Origin: Ascidiella aspersa
Lineage: Eukaryota
Length of the DNA: 64,000 bases
Assembly: GCA_963924565.1 (NCBI GenBank)
Contig: OZ004614.1
Span: 25,544,001-25,608,000 of the forward strand
Direction of reading: 5' to 3'
Below, piece after piece: positions 41,878-62,899 of the stretch. How positions within the stretch are numbered: position 1 is the first letter of the stretch; every line of letters starts with the position of its first letter. The notes below the pieces were generated by a model. The model saw nothing but the letters and a program-made list of their open reading frames with translations, did no database searches and was not told the DNA's origin. The position numbers and the translations under genes were made by a program.

Positions 41878-44521
41878 TTAAATGTAAGTGTTGAGCATCG
41901 TGATGAACATATCCTTGGCGAAGACGCTACGGTTCATTCCGGAGGCAAAATCAGCAAGAAGCTTGTTAACCAACTTGACTGTAAGGTCTCGTATGTTTGA
42001 GACAGCGTACTGGACTTTGTCGATGTTTTTCTGCTGTTCAGCGTTCTTCTCGGCCATTTGATCGAGAAGAGCTTTCTGTGCGTCGTTTGCAACTCTAGCG
42101 GCATTCAACGCTGCGTCTTGGGCTTGATTTTTAGCTGAACTGCTCGCCAAAGCTGCGTCCTGCCTTTTATCACTGGCAGCTGACTTGGTAAGACTGGAAT
42201 CTTGGGCTGCGTTGACCAATTTCACAGCATCAAGTTGCGACTCTTGGATGCTGTTCTTGTCCAAGATGCTGGTGATCTGACCGCGTTGTTGGTTGTTTGT
42301 GTTCTCCAGTGCTCCCATGCGAGAGTCCTGCTTGCTGTTATGGCTCCTGATGGATCCGATAACTGCATCCTGGTCGTTGTTCTTGCTCTCAGCGGACTTT
42401 ACCATCTTCCTGATTTGATCCAACATCTCTTCAAGCTCCTTGTTCTCCTTGTAGAGATCCAGGACATCTCTGTAGAGCTTGGAGTTGATTGCAGCTTGCG
42501 CCTGTGTATGTGGTGGGGAGTTAGGATTTGCTCACTTATAAACACTTATTTAATTGCCTTGCTGAACCTCAACACGACATGAATCATTATTGTAATGAAT
42601 TGAGTCAATAAAATGAAATAACCTGACTTGACCGAAGTCTTTGGAGCAGAATGATTTTAATTGATCAGACTTTGGGACAAATGAGTTCATTTTTATTTTA
42701 GAAAACGACATAAGTCAAGTCACGTCATTGAAAAACAGTGACTTTAGTGCACTTAATTCAAGGCCTTGTTTTAAATCATTTCAACACCGGCATAGATAAG
42801 AATGACGCAGGCCACTTAAATGACTAACCCAATAGCTAATTAGGGCGAAGTAACAGGATTCGTTTGGGTAAAATGACTTGACTTGGATTAAGTCCTTCGA
42901 ATAAATGACTTGAGTTGAAATGAAGTGTTATCATTAAGCATTTGTTCATAAAATTGAGTTAATTATCTCAGGTTTTGTACATAAAACAACTTGCTTGCTA
43001 TGTGTTACGTTTTTTGTTGTTTTCACGTTTATTGCTCACAATCGGATGAGTTTACCAATTAGTTCAACGTTAAACTTTGATGACAAGGACTTGAGTTGGA
43101 GTTGACTTGCTCCAACTAAGACTTGACTTGTTATTTTTTTAAAAGCCTTGACTTGAACTCATATTCTTTTAAAAATGACTTTTTTTGCAAAAAACTTGAC
43201 TCGGACTTCGATCATTTCAAAATGGCAACACGGCAAGTTTTTGTGCGAATATTTGAAGAGGCGTTTTTTTTTTCTTTGTTAGAAACAATATCGCCCATTT
43301 TTTGTAAATATTTTTCTTAATTAATAATAAGATGTTGATTATCTCTGTCCCACCAGGTTTTATAATGTAACGTTAATGTATTAAAATCGGTCAACTCGTT
43401 TATCGTTTTTATTTAATTTAAAACAATTTTGCTCTTTGTAATGCAAAAACCACGAGTATGCTAGTCAATAAAAATGCCTTGTTTGCCAATAAAAGTAGAA
43501 AAACATCTAGATAACTTCAAACTTACCGACAACTACCCAAACAGCGAGGCGTATTCAGGGGGTTGCAGCTTAAGCATTAAGTTGATTTATGGCCAAACCG
43601 CATGTAAAACAAAAGGCCAAACCGCATGTAAAAAAAAAGGCCAACCGCATGTAAAAACAATTTATTATCTCTGCCCCACAAGGTTTTATAATGTAATGGG
43701 CGGTACTTTTGGTGTTAAAGCTAACAGGACTCGAAAGCCGGATAAAATTATTTAAAATCAATGTCTAAAATTTTACAAAATCTTAAATGCATAGCAACCC
43801 TCCGTAGTGTTGCGTGTATTTATTTTTTATTTCTATGAAAACGATGTATTTTAATTTGATCGCATCTTTTTTGCCTTCATTTAATTCCACTAGTACAGAT
43901 TTCTCAGCCGTAGCTACGGACCGTACTACAAATCTGGCCTAAAGAAAGCAACGAGCATTTTACCTTCATAAGAGCTTCCATCTTGTCGTTTGAGGACTTG
44001 AAATTGTTGACGATGTTGTAAGTGAAGCAGACTTTGGTGCCGATGGCAGCCAGGTAGCTGTTGAGGGACCTGATCCTCTCATCTCTGTAAGAGAACCATC
44101 TGCTTACGTCTCTCTTGTACCCGTCGAACGTACTGCAGCGCTACGGATTAATTATTTGTTAAAAAAAGGGATGAGTTTGAGATAGAGATAAATAGGTTCA
44201 GACTTGAATTTCAAGTTTTCAAACAAAACACTGGAAAAGAAGTAGGCTGCAAAGCCAACGCTACTTAAAAAAGCATGCTGGGCATGTGCATATTTGCAAA
44301 GTAGCCTATGCTACCGACCTATGCTAAGAGACAGTAATATAACTGGTAAAAAATACTTCTATAAACGCAACTAATGATTTAAGGCAAAAATGTAATTGTA
44401 AAGATAGCAATTTAACAAAACCAATAGATTTAAAATAAGACCTTACCAAAAGGTATGCATTGGTTTCAGGTATTGCCATGCAGGCCACCAGGAAAAGAGT
44501 TACAACAGAAAAAAACTTCAT
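41878..44521 (-). CDS. Secreted coiled-coil repeat protein, paralogue A (291 aa); exons 44447-44521, 43964-44140, 41878-42501
   Basis: Signal-peptide-like MKFFSVVTLFLVACMAIPETNA, GT-AG introns in frame, nine 14-aa NxxQD repeats, AATAAA at 41691-41696, probable 5'UTR donor CAG|GTAAGT near 45233. Colinear with the gene at 59092. Confidence 0.88.
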
Positions 44522-45538: not shown

Positions 45539-45700
45539 CAGGCGCGGATTTAAGGTTTTGGTTTGTGGGGGGGATTTTTTTAGCGTGACATCACAAAGTT
45601 ACATCAAAACGTGACGTCATATAGTTACGTCAAAACATGACGTCACAAAGTTGCGCCAAAACGTGACGTCACAAAATTTAATACAAAAGATACAAATAGG
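45539..45700. mobile_element. MITE-like end (CAGGCGCGGATT) carrying three TGACGTCA palindromes
   Basis: TGACGTCA at 45612, 45638 and 45664. An inverted relative lies at about 41500-41638, with fragments at 55790 and 59550-59622. Confidence 0.55.
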
Positions 45701-48700
45701 ATATAGATTCGCCACCCGATTCGATTTGTTTTCAACGCTTGTAGCGTTCGTATTAGGATAATTCGGGGCTTTGAAGCGTCTGTGTTAGAACATGTGTTAG
45801 AAATTAGACGCTTTAAGCGGACCGTATAAGAACAGGATGCAGGCGAACAGCGAATGCGCAGACTAATCATGCATAACGAAACGTTGCCAAGCGATGCAGA
45901 GTATAGATTTTTTTATCTTGTACAGTTTTGGATATTAGAAATGCAGAAATGTTTATAGCTGTACCAAGTTAATGCGATGTTTATAATTTCACCCAGCAAA
46001 TAGAAGGTTAAAAGCTTTTATTGTTGCTAAAGCCTACCTTATTAGCGAACATTATTTGGGTTAGGGTGCGGGTTTGGGTATAAGTCAAGCAATACTATTA
46101 ATAATAATACTTGAACCACCCCTACCCCAGCCTGGAAAGTATAACAGAACACGCGGGTACAATGCCGAAAAAAATCGGGTGACTAGGTGCAACAAAGTTA
46201 AAAAAGGGCGCTGGTCTAGAATCCTACCACATTATTAAATCAACGCACAATATTAGGGTTAGGGGCGGCGAGAGTTAGTGTTTGGGTGTGGGTTGATGAA
46301 GTATTATTATATTCATTTTTAACCCTAACCAAAATAATGTGCATTGTGGTAGGACTTAAGACCAGCACGAAAAAAGTGAATCTCTGGTCTGCTTTCGAAT
46401 TTCCAGACTTCCACGTTTTGATTTTCTCATGCACTCCGTATTGCATACATTGCACTTTAAACATATAAATAGGGTGCACAAACGTTTGACATGTTTAGGG
46501 TGCAGTTCAGATTTTTTTCTGGGTGCACTTGCCATACTTTCCACAGTGCCCCCACCCGAACAGTAACCAACACCCTGTCCCAAATATTGTAGCTTGCTGT
46601 AATAATTGTTTCAACGCTGTGGTAGGATTAAAGACCAGCGCCAATACTTTTATTGTTGCTAAAGCTGCTGTTTCTGGCTATTGACTTTCATTCCAAGGTT
46701 TTATTAGTTAAAAGACAATATTATTTACATTTACAATGCTAAAAAATATTAGTTGTAGCTAATTTACCTCATTATACTAAACTTAGTTAGCAAAATATAT
46801 GCCAAGAAATATTAAATTAGATAAGATGACCTTTGTTTTCCAACTTATTTTCTAAAATTTGGTCACCATTATAATGTAAAGTAAGTCCTAGGTAGTATAC
46901 ATGTTTGAAATATTATAATATTGAAACAAATTTAACTTTAACAATTGGCTATTTTCATGGTGCATATTGCATCTAGTTTGCATTCTGTGGCAGATGCATA
47001 CCAAATATTTTTAAAGCAATTTGTGAGCACACCTCAATAAATAAATTGCACATTTCAGAAAAGGTTGTGTTGCAGTAGGATTTCAAACTTCAGTTATGCC
47101 GAAATATGTCCTCACATCTGGAAATTTGGTGATGTACGTCAGATATCTGTGCATCGCACATTCTTTGAACCACATTTTAATGTAAATTTTTAATTTGTGG
47201 CATATAAATCTTAAGGTCCGAAAATATGTTACTTCCTTCTGTTCATGGTGGCCTGAAGGCATACAACCAAACTAATAAAAACTCATGAATATTATTAGTT
47301 GTAAAAGTGTTGTAGTGATCTCAAGTTGATAAAAAATAGCTGCTGCATAAGGTTGCGAAGTTGTAGGAAATAGTGCCCGATAAATTTAAATTTCATGTGT
47401 CACTACCTTAATTGACCTTACTTTTTACCATTTTTGCATTCTTAACTTTTTCCATTAAGGTCATATACAAGGCATGATTTTTAATAAAATGGTGAACTTA
47501 GTTGTTTATTATCTATAAACTGCTTTAAGTTTAATATCACAGAATTTAATTAAATATTATCATGCCTGGCCAAATTAATTTATATTTTTGTTTTTCATTA
47601 TTAAAAATGTTTTTATTTCCCGAAATACCATTTTATATAATTCCTAGATGTAATATTTCAGTCAACCCCAAAAATTAGGGATTTTGTAAGGTTAAAGTGC
47701 AAGTAAAAAGATGTCTCTGAAAGTGTTAAGTAACCTTTAAATCATTGGAAAAGCTCTCTGCATCAAGTCTACACCCATTTGACAAAGAAACAGCTTCAGT
47801 TTCCATCCCCAACAAACCTTTGTGCGCGGAAGTTAGAGAAAAGGTAATTTCCATTTTGTGTGTTGTGCATTCCAAAACATTAATGTTTACCAGCACTTCC
47901 CAACCTGTTGCCAATGGTTTCCAGGTACCAAATTCGAAAATGTTTTTTGAATAATCTTTAATAACGACTTGGCTAATTTAGTCCACAGTTATTAAAATGT
48001 GTAACCAATATACAAGGCCTATTTAATAAAAACATGCAAGTAGTGCAGGAGAAATATATGTATATCTAACATTTTTAGTATTGTCTAGTGTCGACAAGGG
48101 AGTGCAATCATCTAACAAGGAGAAACAACTAGCGATGAACTCGTGGTGCCTATGTGCAAAAAATCATACAGTGATGAAGAAAAGGACAAACATTTAAATG
48201 TGTAATTATTCTATACCGGTGGTTACTGTATATTTACCCCCCATCATTTCACACAATCGTTCGTGTTTGCCGCTTAAATCTCCACATGGTAAAATAAACA
48301 GATTTGGAAAATCATAAATGGCCCATTGATTTGAGTTATAGTTCCTAACAGGCCGTTTAAAATACCCGGAATGCGATAGTTTATTGAACGATTTTGTGGA
48401 CTACGTATGCTACATTTATTACGCACAACATTGTGCAATTTTGGAAAAACATATAAATAGTTTCCTGCTTTAGTACACTCTGATTATGTTTTTGTGCCTT
48501 GTTTTTAGCTATTAGTGCTTTAAATGTGAGTTTAATAAAATAAAAAACAACGGTTATGTGTTCCAGTGTTGGTTGACTACAAAAACTAAGTCCACTTACA
48601 AATAACAGTATTTTTGTTAGCTGATTTTACGCATTTTGCGTTTCGTCGTTAGTATTAAAAAAAGAGGCCGAACAGTGTATTAAAATAAATAATTTTATTA

Positions 48701-50122
48701 ATTACTACATTCAAATTATGTCCGTGTTGGGTCGTTCCTTGTTCTACAATTGACGATTAAAAATCAAGCAATATATCCACCGCACAACGCAGTAAATCAA
48801 AACGTGAATTGAGCACACATTTTTGTAGTGGTTTATCGTGATATTTATTGATTCGATCTATATTTGCCCCTATGATTTCGTTGTATCTGGTAGGACTCCA
48901 ATTGTCCAGCCACAAGATCGAAATATATATTTCGGAATAAAACAAAAATCGGACTAGGACCTAATACTCGTAATAATAACGTATAAACGGAATATGTCCT
49001 ACGTATAAACGGAATATTTCCGGAATAAGACTTAACTTGCATGAAAGAACCAAGCCTATACAAAATTTGCCGCCCGTAGGTACATCACAAACCCTTCTAA
49101 TAATTTCAACTCTAAAAACAATTTTCTAGCCCTAAACAGGGCCTAAAATCGATGCCAAAACAGCGGAGCCTTAACGGCGCCGTTCCATCTAGGGTGCCCA
49201 AGCGTCGACACCAAAACAACCGATGGCCCTGATCGTCCCATACACTCTCCTTACAGTTTCAGACGTTATTTTGGCGTAACGCCCTGTTTCGATGAATTAA
49301 GGACTTTCCGGCGGGTATGTGTCTTATTTAGGCGGTTTAGATCTTATTCTGTCGTGGGTATTAGGCCTACTGCGTATTTGGCTTTATTATGTCGTTGGTT
49401 TTGCTTTGTAGTTATTATTGTATGTTCCCATCTGATTCCGATACAATCGTGTTTATACTCTTAATAGCTTACGTTACAACATGTTGGTCATCTCGGACAA
49501 ACTTTCGACGTCAACCTGGTTTTAAAATGGCCATATTTCTGAAAAAATCCATCTCTTAAGGATTTAATACTGTTAGCACTGCTGTATTGAGGCATTGTTT
49601 TAACTACGTGTGACGAAACCAAACTAAACAATTATGGTTTGTTCAATGAGAACATGTTATTGACTTGCGTCTAAAAATATTGTTGTTCGCAATATTTGTC
49701 AAAAGGTAAAAAGCTTAGTATTAATGCACATTTCAACATACTAAACCATGCCTATTAAAGATTTTCATCCTGGCAGCTGCACAGCCGACAATTATCTGCG
49801 AGAGCCTGTGGCTGTTTTAATTCTCATCTACACGTCTTGAGTATAGCAGTACCCAAAGTGTACTTCGGTTAAAAATGAGTAACTTTTACATTTGTAGAAG
49901 ATATAAACACAATGATACTTGTGCAAAAACTGTGTGTTTACATTTCGTACTTATCCGTAATTTTAATTTTGCGCTGACTGTTGCAAAGCTGACTTTCACA
50001 CGGTTCTACCTTTTAAATGCCTTTGATTCGCGCTACGTACAGAAGAGTTTTTCAAATTGGAAAATTAAAACTAACACATTTGTGGCAGACATATAAACTG
50101 AGATGTTTGGTTAAACAACAGT

Positions 50123-51370
50123 AAAAATGCTTCTGTACTAAGCGCACATCATAAGCATTTGTAATGCACAATTCTGTGCGAAAAGTTAGCTTTGCGACCT
50201 TTAACGCGCAGTCAAATTACTGCCAAACGAAAAGAGTTAAACGAACAGTTGTTTTACGAAACATCTCAGTTTATGCGTCTTTTACAAATGTGTAATTTTT
50301 AATTTTCCAACTTGAAAAATGCTTCTGTACTAAGCGCGCTTCATAAGCATTTATAGTGCACTTTATGTGCGAAAAGTCAGCTTTGCGACCTTTAACGCGC
50401 AATCAAATTACTGCCAAACGAAAAGAGTTAAACGAACAGTTGTTTTACCAAACATCTCATTTGATATGTCTCCCACAAATGTGTAAGTTTTGATATTCCA
50501 ACTTGAAAAATTCTCCTGTACTAAGCGCTCATCATAAACATTTATAATGCACTACTATGTGCGAAAAGTCAGCTTTGCGACCTTCAACGCGCAATCAAAT
50601 TACTGCCAAACGAAAAGAGTTAAACGAACAGTTGTTTTACGAATAATCTCAGTTTATACGTCTTTTACAAATGTGTAATTTTTAATTTTCCAACTTGAAA
50701 AATGCTTCTGTACCAAGCGCGCTTCACAAGCATTTATAACGCACGACCCTGTGCGAAAAGTCAGCTTTGCGAACTTTAACGCGCAATCAAATTACTGCCA
50801 AACGAAAAGAGTTAAACGAACACTTGTTTTACCTAACATCTCATTTGATATGTCTCCCACAAATGTGTAAGTTGTGATATTCCAACTTGAAAAATTCTCC
50901 TGTACTAAGCGCGCATCATAAGCATTTATAATGCACTACTATGTGCGAAAAGTCAGCTTTGCGACCTTCAACGCGCAATAAAATTACTGCCAAACGAAAA
51001 GAGTTAAACGAACAGTTGTTTTACGAAACATCTCAGTTTATATGGATTTTACAAATGTGTAATTTTTAATTTTCCAACTTGAAAAATGCTTCTGTACTAA
51101 GCACGCTTCATAAGCATTTATAAGGCACGACCCTGTGCGAAAAGTCAGCCTAGTGAACTTTAACGCACAGTCAAATTACTGTCAAACGAAAAGAGTTAAA
51201 CGAACTGTTGTTTTACCAAACATCTCAGTTTATATTTCTCCCACAAATGTGTTAGTTTTAATTTTCCAACTTGAAAAACTTTTCTGTACTTAGCGGGGAT
51301 CAAAGGCATTTAAAAGGTTCAACCGTGGGAAAGTTAGCTTTGCAACAGTCAGCGCAAAATTAAAATTGCG
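50123..51370 (+). repeat. 192-bp tandem satellite, about 6.5 copies, alternating A/B variants
   Basis: TG(C/T)CAAACGAAAAGAGTTAAACGAA recurs at 50221, 50412, 50604, 50796, 50988 and 51180. Confidence 0.95.
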
Positions 51371-54300
51371 GACAAGGTACGAAATGAAAACAAACAGTTT
51401 TCGCACAAGAATCATTGTGTTTATATCTTCTACAATTGTAAAAGTTACTCATTTTTAACCGAAGTACACTTTGGGTACTGGTATACTCAAGACGTGTACA
51501 TGAGAATTAAAACAGCCACAGGCTCTCGCAGACAATTGTCGGCTGTGCAGCTGCCAGGATGAAAATCTTTAATAGGCATGGTTCAGTATGTTGAAATGTG
51601 CATTAATACTAAGCTTTTTAACTTTTGACAAATATTGCGAATAACTTTTAGACGCAAGTCAAAAATATGTTCTCGTTGAACAAACCATAATTGTTTAGTT
51701 TGGTTTCGTCACACGTAGTTAAAACAATGCCTCAATACAGCAGTGCTAACAGTATTAAAACCTTAAGAGATGGATTTTTTCAGACATATGGCCATTTTAA
51801 AACCAGGTTGACGTCGGAAGTTTGTCCGAGATGACCAACATGTTGTAACGTAAGCTATTAAAAATATAAACACGATTGTATCCATCGCTAGCAGTCATTA
51901 CACCTTGGCACCATTTAAGACAGTTTTATAGGAATCAGATGGGAACATACAGTAATAACAACAAAGCAAAAATACAAAAGCTACAATACCATAGTTAGAA
52001 GACCAACGACATAATAAAGCCAAATACGCAATAGGCCTAATTCCCACGACAGAATAAGATCTAAATAAATTCAATAAAACAAGCGTTTGATGGCCAAAAT
52101 AACGTCTGAAACTGTAAGGAGAGGGTATGGGACGAACAGGGACCATCGGCTGTTTTGGTATCGACGCTTGGGCACCCTAGATAGAACGGCGCCGTTAAGG
52201 CTCCGCTGTTTTGGCATCGATTTTAGGCCCTGTTTAGGGTTAGGAAATTGTTTTCAGAGTTGAAATTATTAGAAGGGTTTGTGATGTACCTACGGGCGGG
52301 GTTAGGTGAAATTTTGTGTAGGCTTGGTTCTTGCAAGTTAAGTCTTATTCCGACGTATTTAGGACATATTCTGTTTGTACGCTATTATTACGAGTATTAG
52401 GTCCTAGTCTGATTTTTGTTTTATTCCGAAATATATATTTCGATCTTGTGGCTAGACAATTGGAGTCCTACCAGATACAACGAAACCATAGGGGCAAATA
52501 TAGATCGAATCAATAAATATCACGATAAACCACTACAAAAATGTGTGCTCAATTCACGTTTTGATTTACTGCGTTGTGCGGTGGATATATTGCTTGATTT
52601 TTAATCGTCAATTGTAGAACAAGGAACGACCCAACACGGGACATAATTTTGAATGTAGTAATTAATAAAATTATTTATTTTAATACACTGTTCGGCCTCT
52701 TTTTTTAATACTAAGGATAAAACGCAAAATGCGTAAAAATCAGCTAACAAAAATACTGTTATTTGTAAGTGGACTTAGTTTTTGTAGTCAACCAACACTG
52801 GAACACATAACCGTTGTTTTTTATTTTATTAAACTCACATTTGAAGCACTAATAGCTAAAAACAAGGCACAAAAACATAATCAGAGTGTAGTAAAGCAGG
52901 AAACTATTTATATGTTTTTCCAAAATTGCACAATGTGGTGCGTAATAAATGTAGCATACGTAGTCCATAAAATCTTTCAATAAACTATCGCATTCCGGGT
53001 ATTTTAAACGGCCTGTTAGGAACTATACTCAATCAATGGGCCATTTTGGATATGATTTTCCAAATCTGTTTATTTTACCATGTGCAGTTTTAAGCGGCGA
53101 TCACGAACGATTGTGTAAAATGATGCGGGGTAACTATACAGTAACCACCGGTCTAGAATAATTACACATTTAAATGTTTGTCCTTTTCTTCATCACTGTA
53201 TGATTTTTTGCACATAGGCACCACGAGTTCATCGCTAGTTGTTTCTCCTTGTTAGATGATTGCACTCCCTTGTCGACACTAGACAATACTAAAAATGTTA
53301 GATATACATATATTTCTCCTGCACTACTTGCATGTTTTTATTAAATAGGCCTTGTATATTGGTTACACATTTTAATAACTGTGGACTAAATTAGCCAAGT
53401 CGTTATTAAAGATTATTCAAAAAACATTTTCGAATTTGGTACCTGGAAACCATTGGCAACAGGTTGGGAAGTGCTGGTAAACATTAATGTTTTGGAATGC
53501 ACAACACACAAAATGGAAATTACCTTTTCTCTAACTTCCGCGCACAAAGGTTTGTTGGGGATGGAAACTGAAGCTGTTTCTTTGTCAATTGGGTGTAGAC
53601 TTGATGCAGAGAGCTTTTCCAATGATTTAAAGGTTACTTAACACTTTCAGAGACATCTTTTTACTTGCACTTTCACCTTACAAAGTCCTTAATTTTGGGG
53701 GTTGACTGAAATATTACATCTAGGAATTATATAAAATGCTAAAAATATTTTTAATAATGAAAAACAAAAATATAAATTAATTTGGCCAGGCATGATAATA
53801 TTTAATTAAATTCTGTAATATTAAACTTAAAGCAGCTTATAGATAATAAACAACTTAAGTTCATGACTTGTATATGAATGGAAAAAGTTAAGAATGCAAA
53901 AATGTTAAAAAGTAAGGTCAATTAAGGTAGTGAAACATGAAATTTAAATTTATTGGGCACTATTCGCTACAACTTCGCAACCTTATGCAGCAGCTATTTT
54001 TTATCAACTTGAGATCACTACAACACTTTTACAGCTAATATTATTCATGAGTTTTTATTAGTTTGGTTGTATGCCTTTAAACCACCATGAACAGAAGGAA
54101 GTAACATATTTTCGGACCTTAAGATTTTTATGCCACAAATTTGAAATTTACACAAAAATGTGATTCAAAGAATGTGCGATGCACAGATTTCTGAGACACA
54201 TCACCAACTTTCCAGATGTGCAGACATATTTTGGCATAACTGAAGTTTGAAATCCTACTGCAACACAGCCTTTTCTGAAGTGTGCAATTTAGTTATTGAG

Positions 54301-54560
54301 GTGTACACACATTGCTTTAAAAATATTTGGTATGCATCTGCCACAGAATGCAAACTAGATGCAATATGCACCATAACAATAGCCAATTGGAAGTTAAATT
54401 TAACACCAAAATATTGGCTTCAATTTATAATATTTGAAACATGTATACTACCTAGGACTTACTTTACATTATAATGGTGACCAAATTTTAGAAAATAAGT
54501 TGCAAAACAAAGGTCTTCTTATCTAATTTAATATTCCTTGGCATATATTTTGCTAACTAA

Positions 54561-54734
54561 TCTTTGTATATGGCCGTTGTATATCATTTTGACCTGATAA
54601 AGCACGGCTGTGCGAAAGCTTGTCGAGAATCGATCTTGTCGAGAATCAATTTGACCTGATGAAGCACGGTTGTGCGAAAGCTTGTCGAGAATCAAATACA
54701 ATTTGTCTTTATACAGTGCCACCTGATTCCTGTA
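54561..54734 (+). mobile_element. 174-bp retro-insertion with tandem hammerhead motifs, flanked by a 12-bp duplication
   Basis: Absent from the mirrored left arm (single site near 46783-46794). TTTGCTAACTAA is duplicated at 54549-54560 and 54735-54746. Confidence 0.8.
54587..54689 (+). ncRNA. Two tandem minimal type I hammerhead ribozyme motifs
   Basis: Copy 2 (54650-54689) reads TTTGAC-CTGATGA-A-GCAC-ggtt-GTGC-GAAA-GC-TT-GTCGAG. Copy 1 (54587-54628) has the same design but the core is CTGATAA. Confidence 0.75.
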
Positions 54735-57700
54735 TTTGCTAACTAAGTTTATTATAATGAAGTAAATTAGCTACAACTAATATTTTCTTGCATTGTAAAT
54801 GTAAATAATATTGTCTATAGCCAGAAACAGCATTATTAGCTTTAGCAACAATAAAAGTATTGGCGCTGGACTGTTTGGGTGGGGGCCACTGTGGAAAGTA
54901 TGGCAAGTGCACTGTTAAAGTGTTGATAAACACGTAACATGCACCCAGAAAAAAATCTAAACTGCACCCTAAACATATCAAACGTTTGTGCACCCTCTTT
55001 ATATGTTTATAGTGCAATGTATGCAATACGGAGTGCATGAGAAAATCATAACGTGGAAGTCTGAAAATTTGAAAGCAGACCAGAGATTCACTTTTTTCGT
55101 GCTGGTCTTAAGTCCTACCACAACGCACATTATTTTGGTTAGGGTTAAAAATAAATATTAAAAATACTTGACCCACCCACACCCAAACACTAACTCTCGC
55201 CGCCCCTAACCCTAATATTGTGCGTTGATTTAAAATGTGGTAGGATTCTAGACCAGCGCCCTTTTTTACCTTTGTTGCACCTAGTCACCCGATTTTTTTC
55301 GGCATTGTACCCGCGTGTTCTGTTATACTTTCCAGGCTGGGGTAAGGGTGGTTGAAGTATTATTAGTAATTAGTATTGCTTAACCCATATCCAAACCCGC
55401 ACCCTAACCCAAATAATGTTCGCTAATAAGGTAGGCTTTAGCAACAATAAAAGCTTTTAACCTTCTATTTGCTGGGTAAAATTATAAACATCGCATTAAC
55501 TTGGTACAGCTATAAACATTTCTGCATTTCTAATATCCAAAACTGTACAAGATAAAAAATTCTGTAGTCTGCATCGCTTGGCAACGTTTCGTTATGCATG
55601 ATTAGTCTGCGCATTCGCTGTTCGCCTGTATCCTGTTCTTATACGGTCCGCTTGAAGCGTCTAATTTCTAACACATGTTCTAACACAGACGCTTCAAAGC
55701 CTCGAATTATCCTAATACGAACGCTACAAGCGTTGAAAACAAATCGAATCGGGTGGATTCGCAAAAAGCGAAAACGCCTTTGCAGGATGCAGGCGCGGAT
55801 TGAGAACTTTTCCTTCCGGGAGCGGATGCAAGGATTAGATGCACTATGTTTTGATGTCAATGACTTGACTTGGACTTAAGATATTTTACAAAATTGATTG
55901 AAATTGGCCTAGGCTCAACGTAATGAGTGGAAATGATATTGAGTGGATAAGGAGGTTTGCTATAGAACGAGTTAAGACGCAAAACAAATTCCGAAATGGG
56001 CTTCGGCTGTAGGTTATTATAAGGCACACAATGTAAACAAGAATTTATTTATTGCTGTGTTTAAAAAAAATTTAATTCGTTTTTGGGTGTATTTCAAAGG
56101 AAAATTTAATCGTTTTAGGGTGAATTTTAAAGGAAATTTAAATTCGTTTTAATTAGCTTTTAGGGTTTATTTAGTCGTTTCAAACTTACACTGGACGTTT
56201 TTTTTTAAAGAAACATTTGGCACAAACACAGCGTTGTTGTTACAAAACAGCGCCCCTAATCACCTTGGGCCACTTGCATAAGCGCACTTAACACCAACGA
56301 GAATTTCGCACCTGAAAAAACATGACTCTTGAACGGAAGCACTCTTAGAGGGATCAGTCTTTGCGAAAACATTCTGCGGGAAATTGAGCCTCGAAATCCC
56401 GCGCACTCGACTACAGGACCAGGGGTTCATTGACGCACGCTCGGTACTTAGCAGTAGCAACAAGTTTATGCGGAGAAAATCCGTTTGGATACGGGCGATT
56501 TGTTTGTTTTTTGGTTGCATGACAACTTTGAAAACGAACTGGTGTTTTCTTTAACCCAGCGTGCGCAGAAAGATACGGTCTGTCAATAATCAAATTTTAA
56601 GCAAATATTTTTGCAATATTTAAAAATAATTTTGCTGACCACTATTTCAGCTTTGTCAGGCGTTTTATGTAAGAATTTGCAAAACGTTTGAAAAATAACA
56701 TTTGATACAACCATGAAAAAATGATGAAAAAACAACAAATAAAATAGTATTTTTTTATTTGCTAAAAAAATCTGTATAAATTGCATTAAGTCACACGTTT
56801 TTGACTATGAATTAAGTTGCTCTAGATTTGTTGTTTTTATATTTTATTGATTTTAAAAATCTTTTTCCTCTTTTTTGTATCAATTTTGTTTTCTTTTAAT
56901 ATTACTAGTCATATTAAAATTTAAGCGACAAAATAAAAATGAGCTAAAATCAGACGTCTGAGTCGGCAAACACTTCGTCCAACTTTAACTGGTGTAAATC
57001 CGCCCTTCTGTAAATATGTTAAAACTTCAACAGTCCTAAACATTTCACTTGGCTAAAATCACCGAAACATAAAAAGTTAAAAACGCCTCATAACAGTGAA
57101 ATTTGATGTTCAGTGAAAAACATTCAAGAAAAGGGAGGTTTGTATAAGACCCGGAAGAGCTCTACGTCACTGGGCTGTTGTTTCAAGTGGATTGCACAAG
57201 AGTGTGATTGCAAACCCGGGGATTATCGCTTGTAACAACAGCTTAACGTTAGTTAGGGCTAGTTTTAAATTGGCCGGCTCTATTTAATGTTGTGTTGTGC
57301 CGATATCGGATATATTGGACAAAAAATATGGCAAAGCGATACAATACTAAAATATTACTATGCACAAAAATAAAATTGAAAGCTTCAAAGCCTTTTTTCA
57401 GGGTGTTCTTTGCTTTACTGTTAAGAGTTTGAACCCACTTTTTTTGATCAATTTAACTGGTTTGTTTTGTTATTTTGTATTCTGGGATACAGAAATGTAA
57501 TGTTGTACCGATGAAGCGTTGGAGTTCACTTAAAATAAAAATTCCTATCTTTAAAAGAATATTTTCGACTGAAAAGTAAACGTTATGATTTTGGCTCAAG
57601 AATATAGTCATTAGATATGACAATTTCGGAAAATGGCGACATATTTTTGTCAAATTACATCCGATTTTTAAAAGTTGAACGGTTAGTTTTTAGTTTTTCG

Positions 57701-59091: not shown

Positions 59092-62000
59092 ATGAAGTTT
59101 GTTTCGATTGCGTTGTTCGTTTTCGCCGCTTCGGCCATTCTCCCCCAAAGCAGCGCATACCTTGTGGTAAGTTACAATGTTGTAATGACTAAAGGCTTGA
59201 CTCAAGTCACTGTTTATAAATAATCTGACTTGATTTGAGTCGTTTTGGCTTTATACTTTTTCATAAACGGACTGATAGGAATTGACGATCGCGGACTGAA
59301 TATGTGTTTATTATCTATAGGACCAGTGGTTCTGAACCAGGGTTTGATAGAACCCCTGGGGTTCGTCGAGAACTTTCTTTGAAACATAAATGCTGTTATT
59401 TAAAGTTAAATTTGAATCTACTTTGTGTTCCAAGGCGTCAAGTAACTCTGTTAAATTGAAAGTTTGACCAATCAAACTATTTGATTAAGTCCAGTTTCAG
59501 TATTAGCGCACGGGTTGGCTACAGAACAACAGGTGTTTTAAGACGAAATGTTTTATGACGTCATGTTTGAGTCATCCATGACAACTTTCATGCCCCCTCG
59601 AATAAAAAATCCTGGATCCGGCCAATTTGATGACAAACACGAAAAAAGAAATACTAAACGAAAATTAGGGGTTCGGCGAAAGCTTGCAGAATGACTTGGG
59701 GGTTCGACAGGTTGTCCAAGGTTAAGAACCACTGCTCTAGACAATCTTTAAACTAAGGAAATGTAAATAACTATGCAACAAAATGTAATGCGTCTTGATG
59801 AATTGCGGTTCAATTTAGAACATAATCAAAATTTGGAATTTTTCTTTAAACAACGTTTCAAATATAATTTATTTTAATTAAGGAAATATTGCTGGTAGAA
59901 TTAACTCAGTGGGCCGAACTTTTTAAACCGCATAAACTTACATAAAACTACATAAAAGTAAAAAAAAACGAAAAAATAGTACTATCCACTAAACTATTAC
60001 TAATAATGACTGCTCTGAAAATATATGAAAAAGAGTGAGTTTTGCGAAACTTTAACTATTGAAATAGTGGGAAAAACATGAGGCTGTGGTTTGATGATCC
60101 CATCCTATTAGCAAGATTTTTTAATCCGCAGCGTTGCAGTACCTTCGATCGTTACAAGAGCGACGTGAGCCGTTGGTTCAGCTACAGAGACCAGAGAATC
60201 AGCTCCGCCTACAACTACGCAGTGGCCATCAACAGGAAAGCATGCGCCGTCTACTCCATGGTCAAGACCTTTGACGATACCACCAAGAAAATGGAGAGCT
60301 ACATGACTGCACAGTCGAGGACTAACCAGCAACTTCAGGGTAGGTTGTCTCACCTGTAGGAAATAAGGAAAGGGCTTGTTGGACGCCATTTTTTATTCAT
60401 CCAGCGACAATGGCCCAGGTTTTAGGAAAATGCCACGAAAGGCTTTTTATATTTATGTTTTCTAAAAAAATGGTTGTTTGTAATCTTTTAAACCTGAAGG
60501 TAATAATAATAAAAATGATAATAAAAAAATACAAATATTTCAAAAATGAAATCAAAAAACGAATATCAAAGCCTGAAAAATAGGTAGCCTATTTTCAACG
60601 TTTTAAATACCGGTAGTTATTTATTAAAAAAAAATACTACTTGTGTATGGGCTTTGATATTTGTTGTACGTCTAACTACAGTCGTAAATCATTATATTAA
60701 CACATATTAAAACATTCACAAAATGCTGCCTGCTTCTGCATGGGTTTGATATCGATTCTACTTCTAACTACAACCTCCAGCCATTATCTTAAGATTTATT
60801 CGAAACGTTCAACAAGCTACCTACTTCTGTATGGGCTTATTTATTCAACGTCTAACTCCACCCCTTAGCTATTCGGCTCCATAATAAAAAACAAACCTTT
60901 CTTTTTCCTTCCAGGTCAAATGAGCGATCTTAAGAACAAGAACTCAGCTCTTAGACGCGAAATGGAATCGCTCCAGTCCAAGGTCCGATCCATTGAGAAG
61001 AAGAACGGCGAGCAAGATGGAGCTTTGAGCAGTTTGAAGAGCCACAATTCAAGGCAGGATTCCCGCATGGGAAGCATAGAAGCTGTCAATAGAGACCAGA
61101 ACGCACAGATCAGCAAGGCTAATGACCACAACGCTAGACAGGACGGAAGCATTAGGGATTTGCAGGTGTGTGGATTGTATAGGTAAAAAGAAAAATTTTC
61201 TTACATGGAAAATGAATTGTTTTCTAAACAAAACCATGGAGATTTTTTATTCTTAAAACTTAATCTGTTTTCTTGCCGGAACGATTAAAATTTTTTACCG
61301 AAGCCATGAATTTTTTGCTTATCAGAACCTTGGAGATTTTTTTGTTACCAAATGTATAATTTTTTTCTTGACAGAACGATGACAATTTTTTTACGAAAAA
61401 CATGAATCCCGCACAAAAATTTTCGCTTTCATATCTGAACCATGAAATTTTCCTAAAGGATCCATTAAGATTGTTTTATTGAATAGCCTTACCGTTCTAC
61501 AGTTTTTAGTTTTACAGTTATTCGGTCCCTAATGAAAAAAAAATGACGCTGTCGTTATGACTTATTTACCAGGCGGTCAACACCAGACAAGACGGCAGCA
61601 TTAGCGAGTTGAACCAGAAGAACTCTGCCCAGGATTCTTCCATCGCAGCAATAAACACCAAGAACGGACAACAGGATCAGGAGATAGCTTCCATCAAGTA
61701 AGTCTTCAATCCAACCAGGAAATTATTATTTTTATTTTTTTTTTTTGAGTCTGTAGGTAATTTATGCCTTTGGGCAGTTAAAATAAGCGATAATTAAGCA
61801 CGTTAGAATTCCAATTTGCTTATTGTCTGCATAAAAATACCACTTTTTGCTTTTTCTAACGAACATTTTACGACCAAGATAAAAAATTTATCTTTCTAAA
61901 AAAAATAATAAAAAAATGAACAAAAATCTACATAAAAACGACTTTTGCTTATTTCAATCAATATTTAATGACTAAAAAGATCTTCCTTTATCCAGGGACG

Positions 62001-62899
62001 TTAACAACAAACAGCATGAGAGGATCGAGTCCCTTGCATCCAGCAACGCAGAACAAGATAAGAAGATCAACTCTCTCCTGGAAACTGTTCAGAACATCGC
62101 TGAAATCACCACCAAGCTCGTGAAGGAATTGCTTCTCGAGTTCAGTAAGAAGGTTAACAAGTGCGTGTTCAGCAACGACATGTTCTCCTGTATGTTGGCT
62201 CCTGTCCCAAGGCCGGCCTACACCTTCACACAAAGCAGTAGCCTTGGTGAGTTTGACAGAAATAATATGATGTAGCTTGAAAATGAATCTCAAAGTCAAA
62301 CAGGTCGAGTAAATCGGCATTTTCTTGATAAAGGCCGGCCTACACTTTCACACGAAGCAGTAGTGAGAATGGCAGTGATACCACGTTGGAGTATGACATT
62401 TGTAAATACTGAAGTTGTTTTGCAAAAGAATTCCCGAAGAATTCGGGCAGTTTTCGGTTAAAGTACATTTGGGTTTAATATTTAGAAAAACTATTGTTGT
62501 CCTTTAGCTTCGAATAGTATAAGATTGGAAACTTGTATAAGCTTGGAAACCTTACATTTTGAAATAAATACGAGTTAATTAGGCTATCTGCCAAGATCTT
62601 TTTGCTATTAGCTTTGAATGCTTCTAATAAGTTAAAAATTGTAAACGATTTATTTGTGTACACTATGTACGGATTTGTAATGTAGCTTGGTAATAAACTG
62701 CAAAGCCAAAAAGAGTAAATCAACACCATCCTGATTAAGACGTTTCGATTCGAACTTCTATCATGATCAGTCAATGTTACTTGTTGATGTCGATCTACTC
62801 AACCTCTTCGGTGTTGATTTTCATTTCAGTTGCTAAGTCTGTTGAACCTTGCATTTTATTTCAGATGCCGCTAAGATCTTGGCCGAAGTTGCCGAATAA
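59092..62899 (+). CDS. Secreted coiled-coil repeat protein, paralogue B (about 314 aa); exons 59092-59166, 60132-60339, 60915-61165, 61573-61697, 61996-62246, 62865-62899
   Basis: Signal-peptide-like MKFVSIALFVFAASAILPQSSA, phase-compatible GT-AG introns (0,1,0,2,1), RCSTFD.YK.DVSRWFSYRD shared with paralogue A, and nine NxxQD repeats. The last exon is the least certain. Confidence 0.88.
59324..59734. mobile_element. hAT/Charlie-like MITE in intron 1 of paralogue B
   Basis: TIRs CAGTGGTTCTGAACC ... GGTTAAGAACCACTG. The right flank CTCTAGAC fits the Charlie NTCTAGAN target and the left flank is degenerate. A similar end occurs at 40868. Confidence 0.8.
62600..62815 (-). mobile_element. Penelope-like pseudo-LTR with hammerhead motif (62734-62775, core mutated)
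   Basis: Minus strand reads ATTGA-CTGATCA-T-GAT-loop-ATC-GAAA-CG-TC-TTAAT. An inverted piece GATGTCGATCTACTC lies adjacent at 62786 (+). Confidence 0.6.

What the first reader, a model, noticed from the sequence alone, without database searches (positions are those of the whole stretch)
45706..55762. 10-kb almost fully palindromic transposon with ~4.4-kb inverted arms and a 7-bp target duplication
Seen: 45713-50122 mirrors 51204-55755, the mirror stops sharply at CACCCGATTCG.. / ..CGAATCGGGTG, and GATTCGC is directly repeated just outside both ends (5-bp ATTCG if the ends are drawn one base wider). No transposase ORF is visible. Known: CA..TG ends, a 7-bp TSD and long TIRs with internal tandem repeats describe Galileo-type foldback elements of the P superfamily, whose TIRs are usually far shorter. 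Inference: a giant non-autonomous foldback that moved as one unit into the shared upstream region of two divergent paralogues, and a likely cruciform or rearrangement hotspot.
Basis: partly seen in the sequence, partly recalled or inferred. Interest (0 to 1): 0.85.

Follow-up and report, generated by a model that had tools for sequence, protein, structure and literature searches.

The report
Giant 10-kb foldback DNA transposon
This is a real, non-coding 10-kb "foldback" jumping gene with 4.4-kb mirror-image arms, one of about a dozen such giant copies in this (probably sea-squirt) genome; it is an ordinary kind of element in an unusually large format, and the enzyme that moves it was not found.

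Summary
Window 45713-50122 mirrors 51204-55755 (96% identity), around a 192-bp tandem array. The ends are CACCCGATTCG../..CGAATCGGGTG and GATTCGC is duplicated outside both. It is not a local accident or an assembly artefact. The 25-base terminus occurs 86 times in the 308-Mb genome (control 0). Of 17 end pairs, 13 have perfect 7-bp duplications, all of different sequence. About 13 copies are giant (8.7-11.4 kb); others run down to a 57-bp mini-element. The window copy and a chromosome-7 copy share the same unequal arm pair (tree support 100/99), so the palindrome was copied whole. No coding remnant exists in it. The "Galileo/P superfamily" label is not shown. The genome has intact P-type transposases, but the two families examined have different ends and one makes 8-bp duplications. 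None of 51 P-type hits lies near a family terminus. P remains the best guess (about 45%), from the 7-bp duplication and CA..TG ends. The cruciform or rearrangement idea is untested: the centre has a 122-nt unpaired loop. No empty site exists in the assembly, and read data were unavailable.

The parts
45706..45712 (.). left copy of the 7-bp target-site duplication GATTCGC
45713..50122 (+). left arm (type A, lacks the ~186-bp nested insert); the outermost 25 bases CACCCGATTCGATTTGTTTTCAACG are the conserved family terminus
50123..51312 (+). central 192-bp tandem array (6.2 units) that runs into the inner end of the right arm; the left arm ends in about 1.3 units of the same repeat in inverted orientation, so the symmetry centre is at 50122/50123
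51204..55755 (-). right arm (type B, carries the nested insert)
54559..54745 (-). nested small element that marks B-type arms: TTAGTTAGCAAA duplication, ~36-bp inverted ends, ~62-bp units with a CTGATGA..GAAA core; also present in the B arms of the chromosome-2 and chromosome-7 copies
   Evidence: (D3); no Rfam match
55756..55762 (.). right copy of the 7-bp target-site duplication GATTCGC
41893..44521 (-). left flanking gene (coiled-coil protein, no Pfam family), paralogue of the right flanking gene, head-to-head with it
59092..62197 (+). right flanking gene, diverged paralogue (39-55% aa identity per exon)

Best explanation
Window 45713-55755 is one copy of a multi-copy family of non-autonomous class II (terminal-inverted-repeat) transposons in foldback format. 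It has two 4.4-kb arms in inverted orientation that meet in a 192-bp tandem array, and no gene. It was inserted as a single 10-kb unit into the space between two head-to-head paralogous genes. The insertion was made by a transposase supplied in trans that makes cuts staggered by 7 bases (shown by the duplication). That enzyme recognises the outermost ~25-28 bases CACCCGATTCGATTTGTTTTCAACG, which is an inference from the strict conservation of the terminus and from a 57-bp mini-element made of the two termini alone. The arms are family-specific sequence, not a patchwork of other repeats. Two arm types (A and B) exist, and the window copy and a chromosome-7 copy carry the same A/B pair, so the whole palindrome is what gets copied. 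In another copy both arms are type B and 98-99% alike, which points to at least one arm-to-arm conversion. The transposase is unidentified. A P-superfamily enzyme of the Galileo/1360 kind is the most likely (about 45%), because that is the established superfamily with regular 7-bp duplications, CA..TG ends and foldback-like members, and because P-type transposases are abundant and intact in this genome. No link was demonstrated.
For: Structure and duplication. Family: the terminal 300 bp has at least 167 candidate matches, and all 40 scored ones start at CACCCGATTCG. The 25-base terminus has 86 hits against 0 for the control. Of 17 end pairs, 13 have perfect 7-bp duplications of different sequence (12 independent) and one more matches 6 of 7. 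Other giant copies have the same arm-array-arm layout. The mid-arm 691 bp is found only in about 29 places, paired + and - inside about 13 giant copies, and the 192-bp array sits at their centres. Moved as a unit: the arm tree groups window-left with C7-left at 100/99, and the B-arm insert is shared by window-right, C7-right and both C2 arms; the window copy (GATTCGC) and the C7 copy (CACGAGG) have different duplications. Non-autonomous: no ORF, no tblastn match to the genome's own P transposases with E below 0.1 in the four long copies, and no credible Pfam match. Not an artefact: the arms differ by 3.9% plus 13 indels, and the flanks are unique. Background for P: 7-bp duplications in Galileo and 1360, and duplication size set by the transposase (PMC3698922); long TIRs that grow by tandem repeats and by recruiting internal sequence, longest in non-coding two-TIR copies (PMC3573991); 51 P-type hits, with 800-aa intact frames carrying the full THAP9-like domain set.
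Against: No autonomous copy with these termini was found. None of the 51 PF21787 hits lies within 20 kb of any of the ~105 family or variant termini. P family A has ends CACTGATCTC.. and 8-bp duplications in 3 of 3 copies. The second P group has ends CAAAGAGAC... No terminal motif recurs in the arms or array above chance, and a THAP-like core is only weakly enriched in the first kilobase. No empty-site allele exists in the assembly. Read-level confirmation was not possible. Whether the 57-bp mini-element transposed as such or is a deletion made in place is unknown.
Confidence: 0.88

Rival explanations
1. The family is moved by a transposase that is not of the P type: a Mutator-like/Foldback-type enzyme (earlier scan notes report such elements in this genome), a hAT, or an undescribed superfamily. 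The Galileo resemblance would then be convergent.
For: No P-type gene is linked to the termini. Long foldback arms have arisen in several superfamilies (PMC3688188 highlights; PMC3169594). Earlier notes s1-790954 and s1-801569 report foldback-type MULEs in this genome (not tested here). The variant termini CACCCGGTTCG.. are mostly unpaired and could not be examined.
Against: MULE duplications are 8-11 bp (PMC6446971), whereas here they are exactly 7 bp in 13 of 13 perfect cases. Dada (6-7 bp) lacks TIRs and targets small-RNA genes (PMC3706591). The 5-bp (Transib-like) reading is rejected. From my own knowledge of the Repbase scheme, P is the only established superfamily with a regular 7-bp duplication at unspecific targets.
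Confidence: 0.4
2. The palindrome is a local product: an inverted duplication made by fork template switching at this locus, or an assembly artefact of fold-back chimeric long reads.
For: Large near-perfect palindromes are a known assembly and replication artefact. No read data could be examined.
Against: The same arm-array-arm structure recurs at about 13 loci on 8 chromosomes, each with its own 7-bp duplication. The arms differ by 3.9% and 13 indels, including a nested element in one arm only, whereas an artefact would give identical arms. The mirror ends exactly at the family terminus.
Confidence: 0.02
3. The 10-kb unit is a composite of two separate half-elements that landed head-to-head, not one mobile unit.
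For: Many family termini are unpaired (52 of 86), so one-ended fragments do exist.
Against: A single 7-bp duplication brackets the outer ends. The same A/B arm pair and the same array orientation occur in the chromosome-7 copy at another site.
Confidence: 0.02

Closest known systems
Galileo (P superfamily, Drosophila)
   Same: It has a 7-bp target duplication, ends beginning CA, and very long TIRs. The longest TIRs occur in non-coding two-TIR copies. Tandem-repeat number differs between the two arms. Some copies have non-matching 7-bp flanks (PMC3573991, PMC3698922).
   Different: Galileo TIRs run from about 300 bp to 1.2 kb, whereas here they are 4.4 kb. Galileo's P-type transposase is known, but none is linked here. 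Galileo has THAP sites repeated in the TIR tandem repeats (PMC3688188), and no recurring terminal motif is seen here. The host here is apparently an ascidian, not a fly.
Drosophila Foldback (FB) and other Mutator-like foldback elements (e.g. Tm1 of root-knot nematodes)
   Same: The arms are kilobase-scale inverted repeats that make up nearly the whole element. Most copies are non-coding and the palindromic architecture is the same (PMC3169594; my own knowledge for FB).
   Different: MULE-type duplications are 8-11 bp (PMC6446971), against 7 bp here. FB arms are built of short tandem repeats, whereas here the arms are unique sequence and repeats are confined to the centre.
BuT5, the MITE partner of a divergent P element
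   Same: It is a non-coding family with no resemblance to any known element. It could be classified only once an autonomous element sharing its ends and THAP site was found (PMC3698922). That is exactly the test still missing here.
   Different: BuT5 is about 1 kb with 3-bp TIRs and 8-9-bp duplications. This family is up to 11 kb with 4.4-kb TIRs and 7-bp duplications.
Tetris (foldback transposon of Drosophila virilis that seeded a satellite)
   Same: A foldback element whose internal tandem repeat also occurs as longer arrays elsewhere (PMC4079207). Here the 192-bp unit forms an array of at least 3.3 kb at C8:21.38 Mb, and 67-69% relatives form long arrays on C5, C4 and C9.
   Different: The direction of the relationship between element and satellite was not examined here.

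Membership tests
Non-autonomous foldback-type TIR (class II) transposon | Terminal inverted repeats with a sharply defined, conserved terminus | tested here: met
   All scored copies start at CACCCGATTCG. The terminus has 86 hits against 0 for the control.
Non-autonomous foldback-type TIR (class II) transposon | Target-site duplication of fixed length and different sequence at independent copies | tested here: met
   13 of 17 pairs have a perfect 7-bp duplication (12 independent sites), and one more matches 6 of 7.
Non-autonomous foldback-type TIR (class II) transposon | Arms make up nearly the whole element, with no coding capacity | tested here: met
   The arms cover 8.96 of 10.04 kb. There are no ORFs, no tblastn matches and no credible Pfam hits.
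Non-autonomous foldback-type TIR (class II) transposon | Empty-site allele or presence/absence polymorphism | not testable with these tools
   The haploid assembly has no empty site. No relatives of this genome are in the collection.
P superfamily (Galileo/1360 type) | 7-bp (or 8-bp) target duplication | tested here: met
   7 bp; criterion from PMC3698922.
P superfamily (Galileo/1360 type) | Autonomous relatives with the same termini that encode a THAP9-like/P transposase | tested here: not met
   None of the 51 PF21787 hits lies within 20 kb of a family terminus. P family A has CACTGATCTC ends and 8-bp duplications. The second group has CAAAGAGAC ends. The search was incomplete: other P lineages and the variant termini could not be fetched.
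P superfamily (Galileo/1360 type) | THAP-domain binding site near the end, repeated within the long TIR | tested here: inconclusive
   There is one TNNGGGNW core at +51. There are 8 in the first kilobase against 2.8 expected (p about 0.01 by a simple shuffle) and none in the array. No terminal 10-mer recurs above chance.
Mutator-like / Drosophila FB-type foldback | 8-11-bp target duplication | tested here: not met
   The duplication is 7 bp in all perfect cases; range from PMC6446971.
Dada | No TIRs; insertion into specific small-RNA genes | tested here: not met
   This family has 4.4-kb TIRs and 13 different target sequences; criteria from PMC3706591.
Transib-like (5-bp duplication, CAC ends) | 5-bp target duplication | tested here: not met
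   Widening the ends by one base works only at this locus. In other copies the adjacent bases are not complementary and the duplication is 7 bp.

The most novel reading that the evidence does not exclude
This is a Galileo-like lineage outside insects, in a chordate relative, with TIRs about 3.5 times longer than the record for the P superfamily. Its palindromes are renewed by arm-to-arm copying (template switching or conversion across the fold). One arm could then regenerate a full element. The B/B copy with 98-99% identical arms, and the 57-bp mini-foldback centred on the terminus's own small palindrome, would be footprints of that process.
Probability: 0.2. Interest if true: 0.55.

Novelty: new member of a known kind. 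Interest (0 to 1): 0.35.

Why it matters
It documents that a near-perfect 10-kb palindrome made of unique sequence can be mobilised intact and repeatedly. That is at the upper end of what is known for TIR transposons. It also gives a clean, well-bounded family: a defined 25-base terminus, a 7-bp duplication, and sizes from 57 bp to 11 kb. That makes it suitable for asking how long TIRs arise and how arms are homogenised. For genome annotation, it explains about 13 giant palindromes and dozens of fragments that could otherwise be read as assembly errors or inverted duplications. It does not open a new class of element.

Tried and rejected
1. A P-type remnant in the element: tblastn with the genome's own P transposases against the element and three long copies gave nothing with E below 0.1. 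A Pfam scan of the 10 longest open stretches gave nothing credible.
2. P family A as the mobiliser: rejected, because it has different ends and 8-bp duplications.
3. The second P group (L045): its ends are unlike the foldback's. Its duplication length could not be determined because the L045 copy lacks one and the far end of the C8 copy was not identifiable.
4. The 7.1-kb pair with CACCCGTTTCG ends (L057): it shares only 84 bp with the foldback, its inverted repeat runs outward past the motif, and its 292-aa ORF is a Penelope-like RT/GIY-YIG tail, not a transposase.
5. Copies sharing only the outer ~1 kb: their interiors are unrelated to each other, so they are truncations and not an ancestral coding interior.
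6. The 18.85-kb chromosome-7 copy: a giant foldback with nested insertions and no transposase.
7. Empty site: absent from the assembly.
8. A reciprocal recombination product for the chimeric chromosome-5 copy: not found.
9. Hammerhead or any other RNA family in the element: no Rfam match at E up to 0.1.
Full report
OBSERVATION. The structure is exactly as described. The repeat finder and a whole-window self-BLAST show that 45713-50122 is the reverse complement of 51204-55755. The blocks are 92-98% complementary and are interrupted by indels. The mirror stops sharply at both ends and does not extend into the flanks. The ends read CACCCGATTCG.. and ..CGAATCGGGTG, and GATTCGC lies directly outside both, at 45706-45712 and 55756-55762. 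The centre is a 192-bp tandem array at 50123-51312, 6.2 units. The left arm ends in about 1.3 units of the same repeat in inverted orientation. The symmetry centre is therefore at 50122/50123, and the right side simply carries about five more units. A global alignment gives 96.1% identity between the arms over 4,209 columns, with 13 indels of 10 bases or more.

IT IS A FAMILY, NOT A LOCAL ACCIDENT. The window is G000:C8:25544001-25608000 in a 308.6-Mb, 75-contig eukaryotic assembly. Earlier scan notes treat the organism as an ascidian; I did not test that. The terminal 300 bp has at least 167 candidate matches, and all 40 scored ones begin at exactly CACCCGATTCG. The 25-base terminus, allowing up to 2 mismatches, occurs 86 times (48 forward, 38 reverse) against 0 for the reversed control.

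Pairing each forward end with the next reverse end gives 17 elements. Thirteen have a perfect 7-bp flanking duplication. Twelve of these are independent sites, all with different sequences; the thirteenth is a segmental duplicate on chromosome 9. One more pair matches at 6 of 7 bases.

Sizes are 57 bp, 1.4, 2.0, 3.1, 3.2 and 5.7 kb, about ten copies of 8.7-11.4 kb, and one of 18.85 kb that carries nested insertions. The mid-arm 691 bp occurs only in about 29 places, paired + and - inside about 13 giant copies. The arms are therefore family-specific sequence, and the giant form is the family's main full-length form. The 192-bp array sits at the centre of each giant copy.

IT MOVED AS ONE UNIT. 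The arms fall into two types. The window's left arm groups with the left arm of the chromosome-7 copy (ultrafast bootstrap/SH-aLRT 100/99). The window's right arm is closest to the inner right arm of the chromosome-7 copy and to both arms of the chromosome-2 copy (97-98%); the tree leaves that grouping unresolved, so it rests on these identities and on the marker below. The second type (B) is marked by a ~186-bp nested element (window about 54559-54745) that is absent from type A. The window copy and the chromosome-7 copy thus carry the same unequal A/B pair in the same orientation relative to the array. They sit at different sites with different duplications, GATTCGC and CACGAGG. The palindrome was copied whole. 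This also means the 3.9% arm divergence largely predates this insertion and cannot be used to date it.

In the chromosome-2 copy both arms are type B. They group together (95/99) and are 98.3% alike, rising to 99.0% in the outer 2.8 kb. That indicates at least one arm-to-arm conversion event.

NOT AN ARTEFACT. Fold-back chimeric reads would give identical arms. Here the arms differ by 3.9%, by 13 indels and by a nested element in one arm only. The same layout recurs at independent loci, and the flanks are unique apart from a common minisatellite. I did not pursue that further.

NON-AUTONOMOUS. The element has no ORF of 150 aa or more. tblastn with this genome's own P-type transposases gives nothing with E below 0.1 in the element or in three other long copies. 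The ten longest open stretches have no credible Pfam match.

WHICH TRANSPOSASE? The genome does contain P-type (THAP9-like) transposases: 51 PF21787 hits, several with 800-aa open frames carrying the HTH, RNase H N and C, GTP-binding insertion and THAP9 C-terminal domains.

The dominant young family is 6-6.7 kb long, with copies 98-99% identical. It ends in CACTGATCTC.. and makes 8-bp duplications in 3 of 3 copies. A second group ends in CAAAGAGAC.., and its duplication length could not be determined. None of the 51 hits lies within 20 kb of any of the ~105 family or variant termini.

Other leads failed:
- A 7.1-kb pair with variant ends carries only a Penelope-like RT/GIY-YIG fragment.
- Copies that share only the outer ~1 kb are truncations with unrelated interiors.
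- No terminal motif recurs in the arms or array above chance. A THAP-like core is only weakly enriched in the first kilobase. Galileo's repeated THAP sites (PMC3688188) are therefore not reproduced.

COMPARISON WITH WHAT IS KNOWN. In the literature, the P superfamily comprises P (8-bp duplication), 1360 and Galileo (7-bp), and duplication size is a function of the transposase (PMC3698922). Galileo TIRs run from about 300 bp to 1.2 kb, the longest in the superfamily. They grow by tandem-repeat expansion and by recruiting internal sequence. They are longest in non-coding two-TIR copies. Chimeric copies have non-matching 7-bp flanks (PMC3573991). All of these have parallels here, including three pairs with non-matching flanks.

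Mutator-like elements make 8-11-bp duplications (PMC6446971). Dada makes 6-7 bp but lacks TIRs and targets small-RNA genes (PMC3706591). By elimination, a P-type enzyme is the best guess (about 45%), but the defining evidence is missing. That evidence would be an autonomous element with matching ends, as was needed to classify BuT5 (PMC3698922). The element works like Galileo; membership is unproven.

CRUCIFORM OR REARRANGEMENT HOTSPOT. This locus is intact. At the centre, the innermost 109 bp pair at 83% across a 122-nt loop. As single-stranded DNA the centre folds far better than shuffles do (z = -12.7). Hairpins on single-stranded templates are therefore plausible. Extrusion from duplex DNA, which favours perfect palindromes with short spacers (established knowledge), is less so.

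At the family level the following are compatible with instability but do not prove it:
- 52 of 86 termini are unpaired.
- Several copies lie in tandem or segmental duplications, for example C2:2.69-2.72 Mb, C4:13.74 Mb (five ends at 5,125-bp spacing) and C9:8.14/8.16 Mb.
- Three pairs have non-matching flanks.

A search for the reciprocal product of the chimeric chromosome-5 copy found nothing.

SURROUNDINGS. The element sits between two head-to-head, strongly diverged paralogues. Three collinear exon matches have 39-55% aa identity. The proteins are coiled-coil with no strong Pfam family. The gene duplication is much older than the insertion. The insertion lies 32 bp from a 13/26-bp TGACGTCA minisatellite that is itself a widespread repeat.

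VERDICT. This is a real, well-bounded, non-autonomous giant foldback transposon: a new member of a known kind, at the upper end of TIR length. The 'moved as one unit' inference is confirmed by independent evidence. The P/Galileo assignment and the hotspot idea remain open.

Noticed in passing
G000:C2:18673176-18673232 (L046:41-97): A 57-bp mini-foldback made only of the two family termini, with a perfect 7-bp duplication (TAAATGG). It is centred on the small palindrome AACGCT-TGK-AGCGTT that is already present in the normal terminus. It is either a minimal mobile unit or a hairpin-mediated deletion product.
   Followed up: partly
L039, L040, L041, L042, L043 (e.g. G000:C2:17164134-17170158): A young P-type (THAP9-like) transposon family, 6-6.7 kb, with copies 98-99% identical. 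It has ~300-bp imperfect TIRs, CACTGATCTC ends and 8-bp duplications. At least four loci have intact 800-aa frames with the full P-transposase domain set, so it is possibly still active.
   Followed up: partly
L045:3036-7861 (G000:C3:35961035-35965860): A second P-type element with perfect 544-bp TIRs, ends CAAAGAGAC, and no target duplication at this copy. Other copies carry that 300-bp end on one side only, so this copy looks rearranged.
   Followed up: partly
window 54559-54745 (right arm only): A nested small element with a TTAGTTAGCAAA duplication and ~36-bp inverted ends. It has two ~62-bp units here (three in the chromosome-2 copy), with a CTGATGA..GAAA hammerhead-like core on the minus strand. 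It is shared by the B arms of the chromosome-2 and chromosome-7 copies, so it entered an ancestral element and not this locus. Rfam finds no match at E up to 0.1.
   Followed up: partly
G000:C8:21383248-21386509; C7:14285215-14286931; C5:16.56-16.65 Mb; C4:20.91 Mb; C9:12.16 Mb: The foldback's 192-bp central unit also forms an array of at least 3.3 kb at C8:21.38 Mb, and an array on chromosome 7 with no family terminus nearby. Relatives at 67-69% identity form long satellite arrays on three chromosomes. This is a possible transposon-satellite link.
   Followed up: no
19 genome sites, e.g. G000:C1:36957740, C3:29778465, C6:10320879: The variant terminus CACCCGGTTCGATTTG occurs 16 times forward and 3 times reverse over 9 chromosomes (binomial p about 0.004), mostly without a partner end. 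The strand bias is unexplained and the sequence could not be fetched.
   Followed up: no
window 45584-45680: A 13/26-bp minisatellite built on TGACGTCA (a CRE-like palindrome), 32 bp left of the insertion site. Similar arrays have at least 344 candidate sites in the genome.
   Followed up: partly
window 41893-44521 (-) and 59092-62197 (+): Head-to-head pair of strongly diverged paralogous coiled-coil genes (39-55% aa identity per exon) with no strong Pfam family. This is an old inverted gene duplication into whose spacer the foldback later inserted.
   Followed up: partly
G000:C4:13742434-13762958: Five family termini on the minus strand at exactly 5,125-bp spacing, forming a tandem array that contains an element end. 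Similar tandem or segmental duplications that include an element end are at C2:2686937/2704238/2721514 and C4:3283800-3354507.
   Followed up: no
L057:2161-3036 (G000:C7:11301760-11302635): A Penelope-like retroelement fragment (RT C-terminus plus a GIY-YIG nuclease motif). It sits inside a structure whose inverted repeats share only 84 bp with the foldback terminus.
   Followed up: partly
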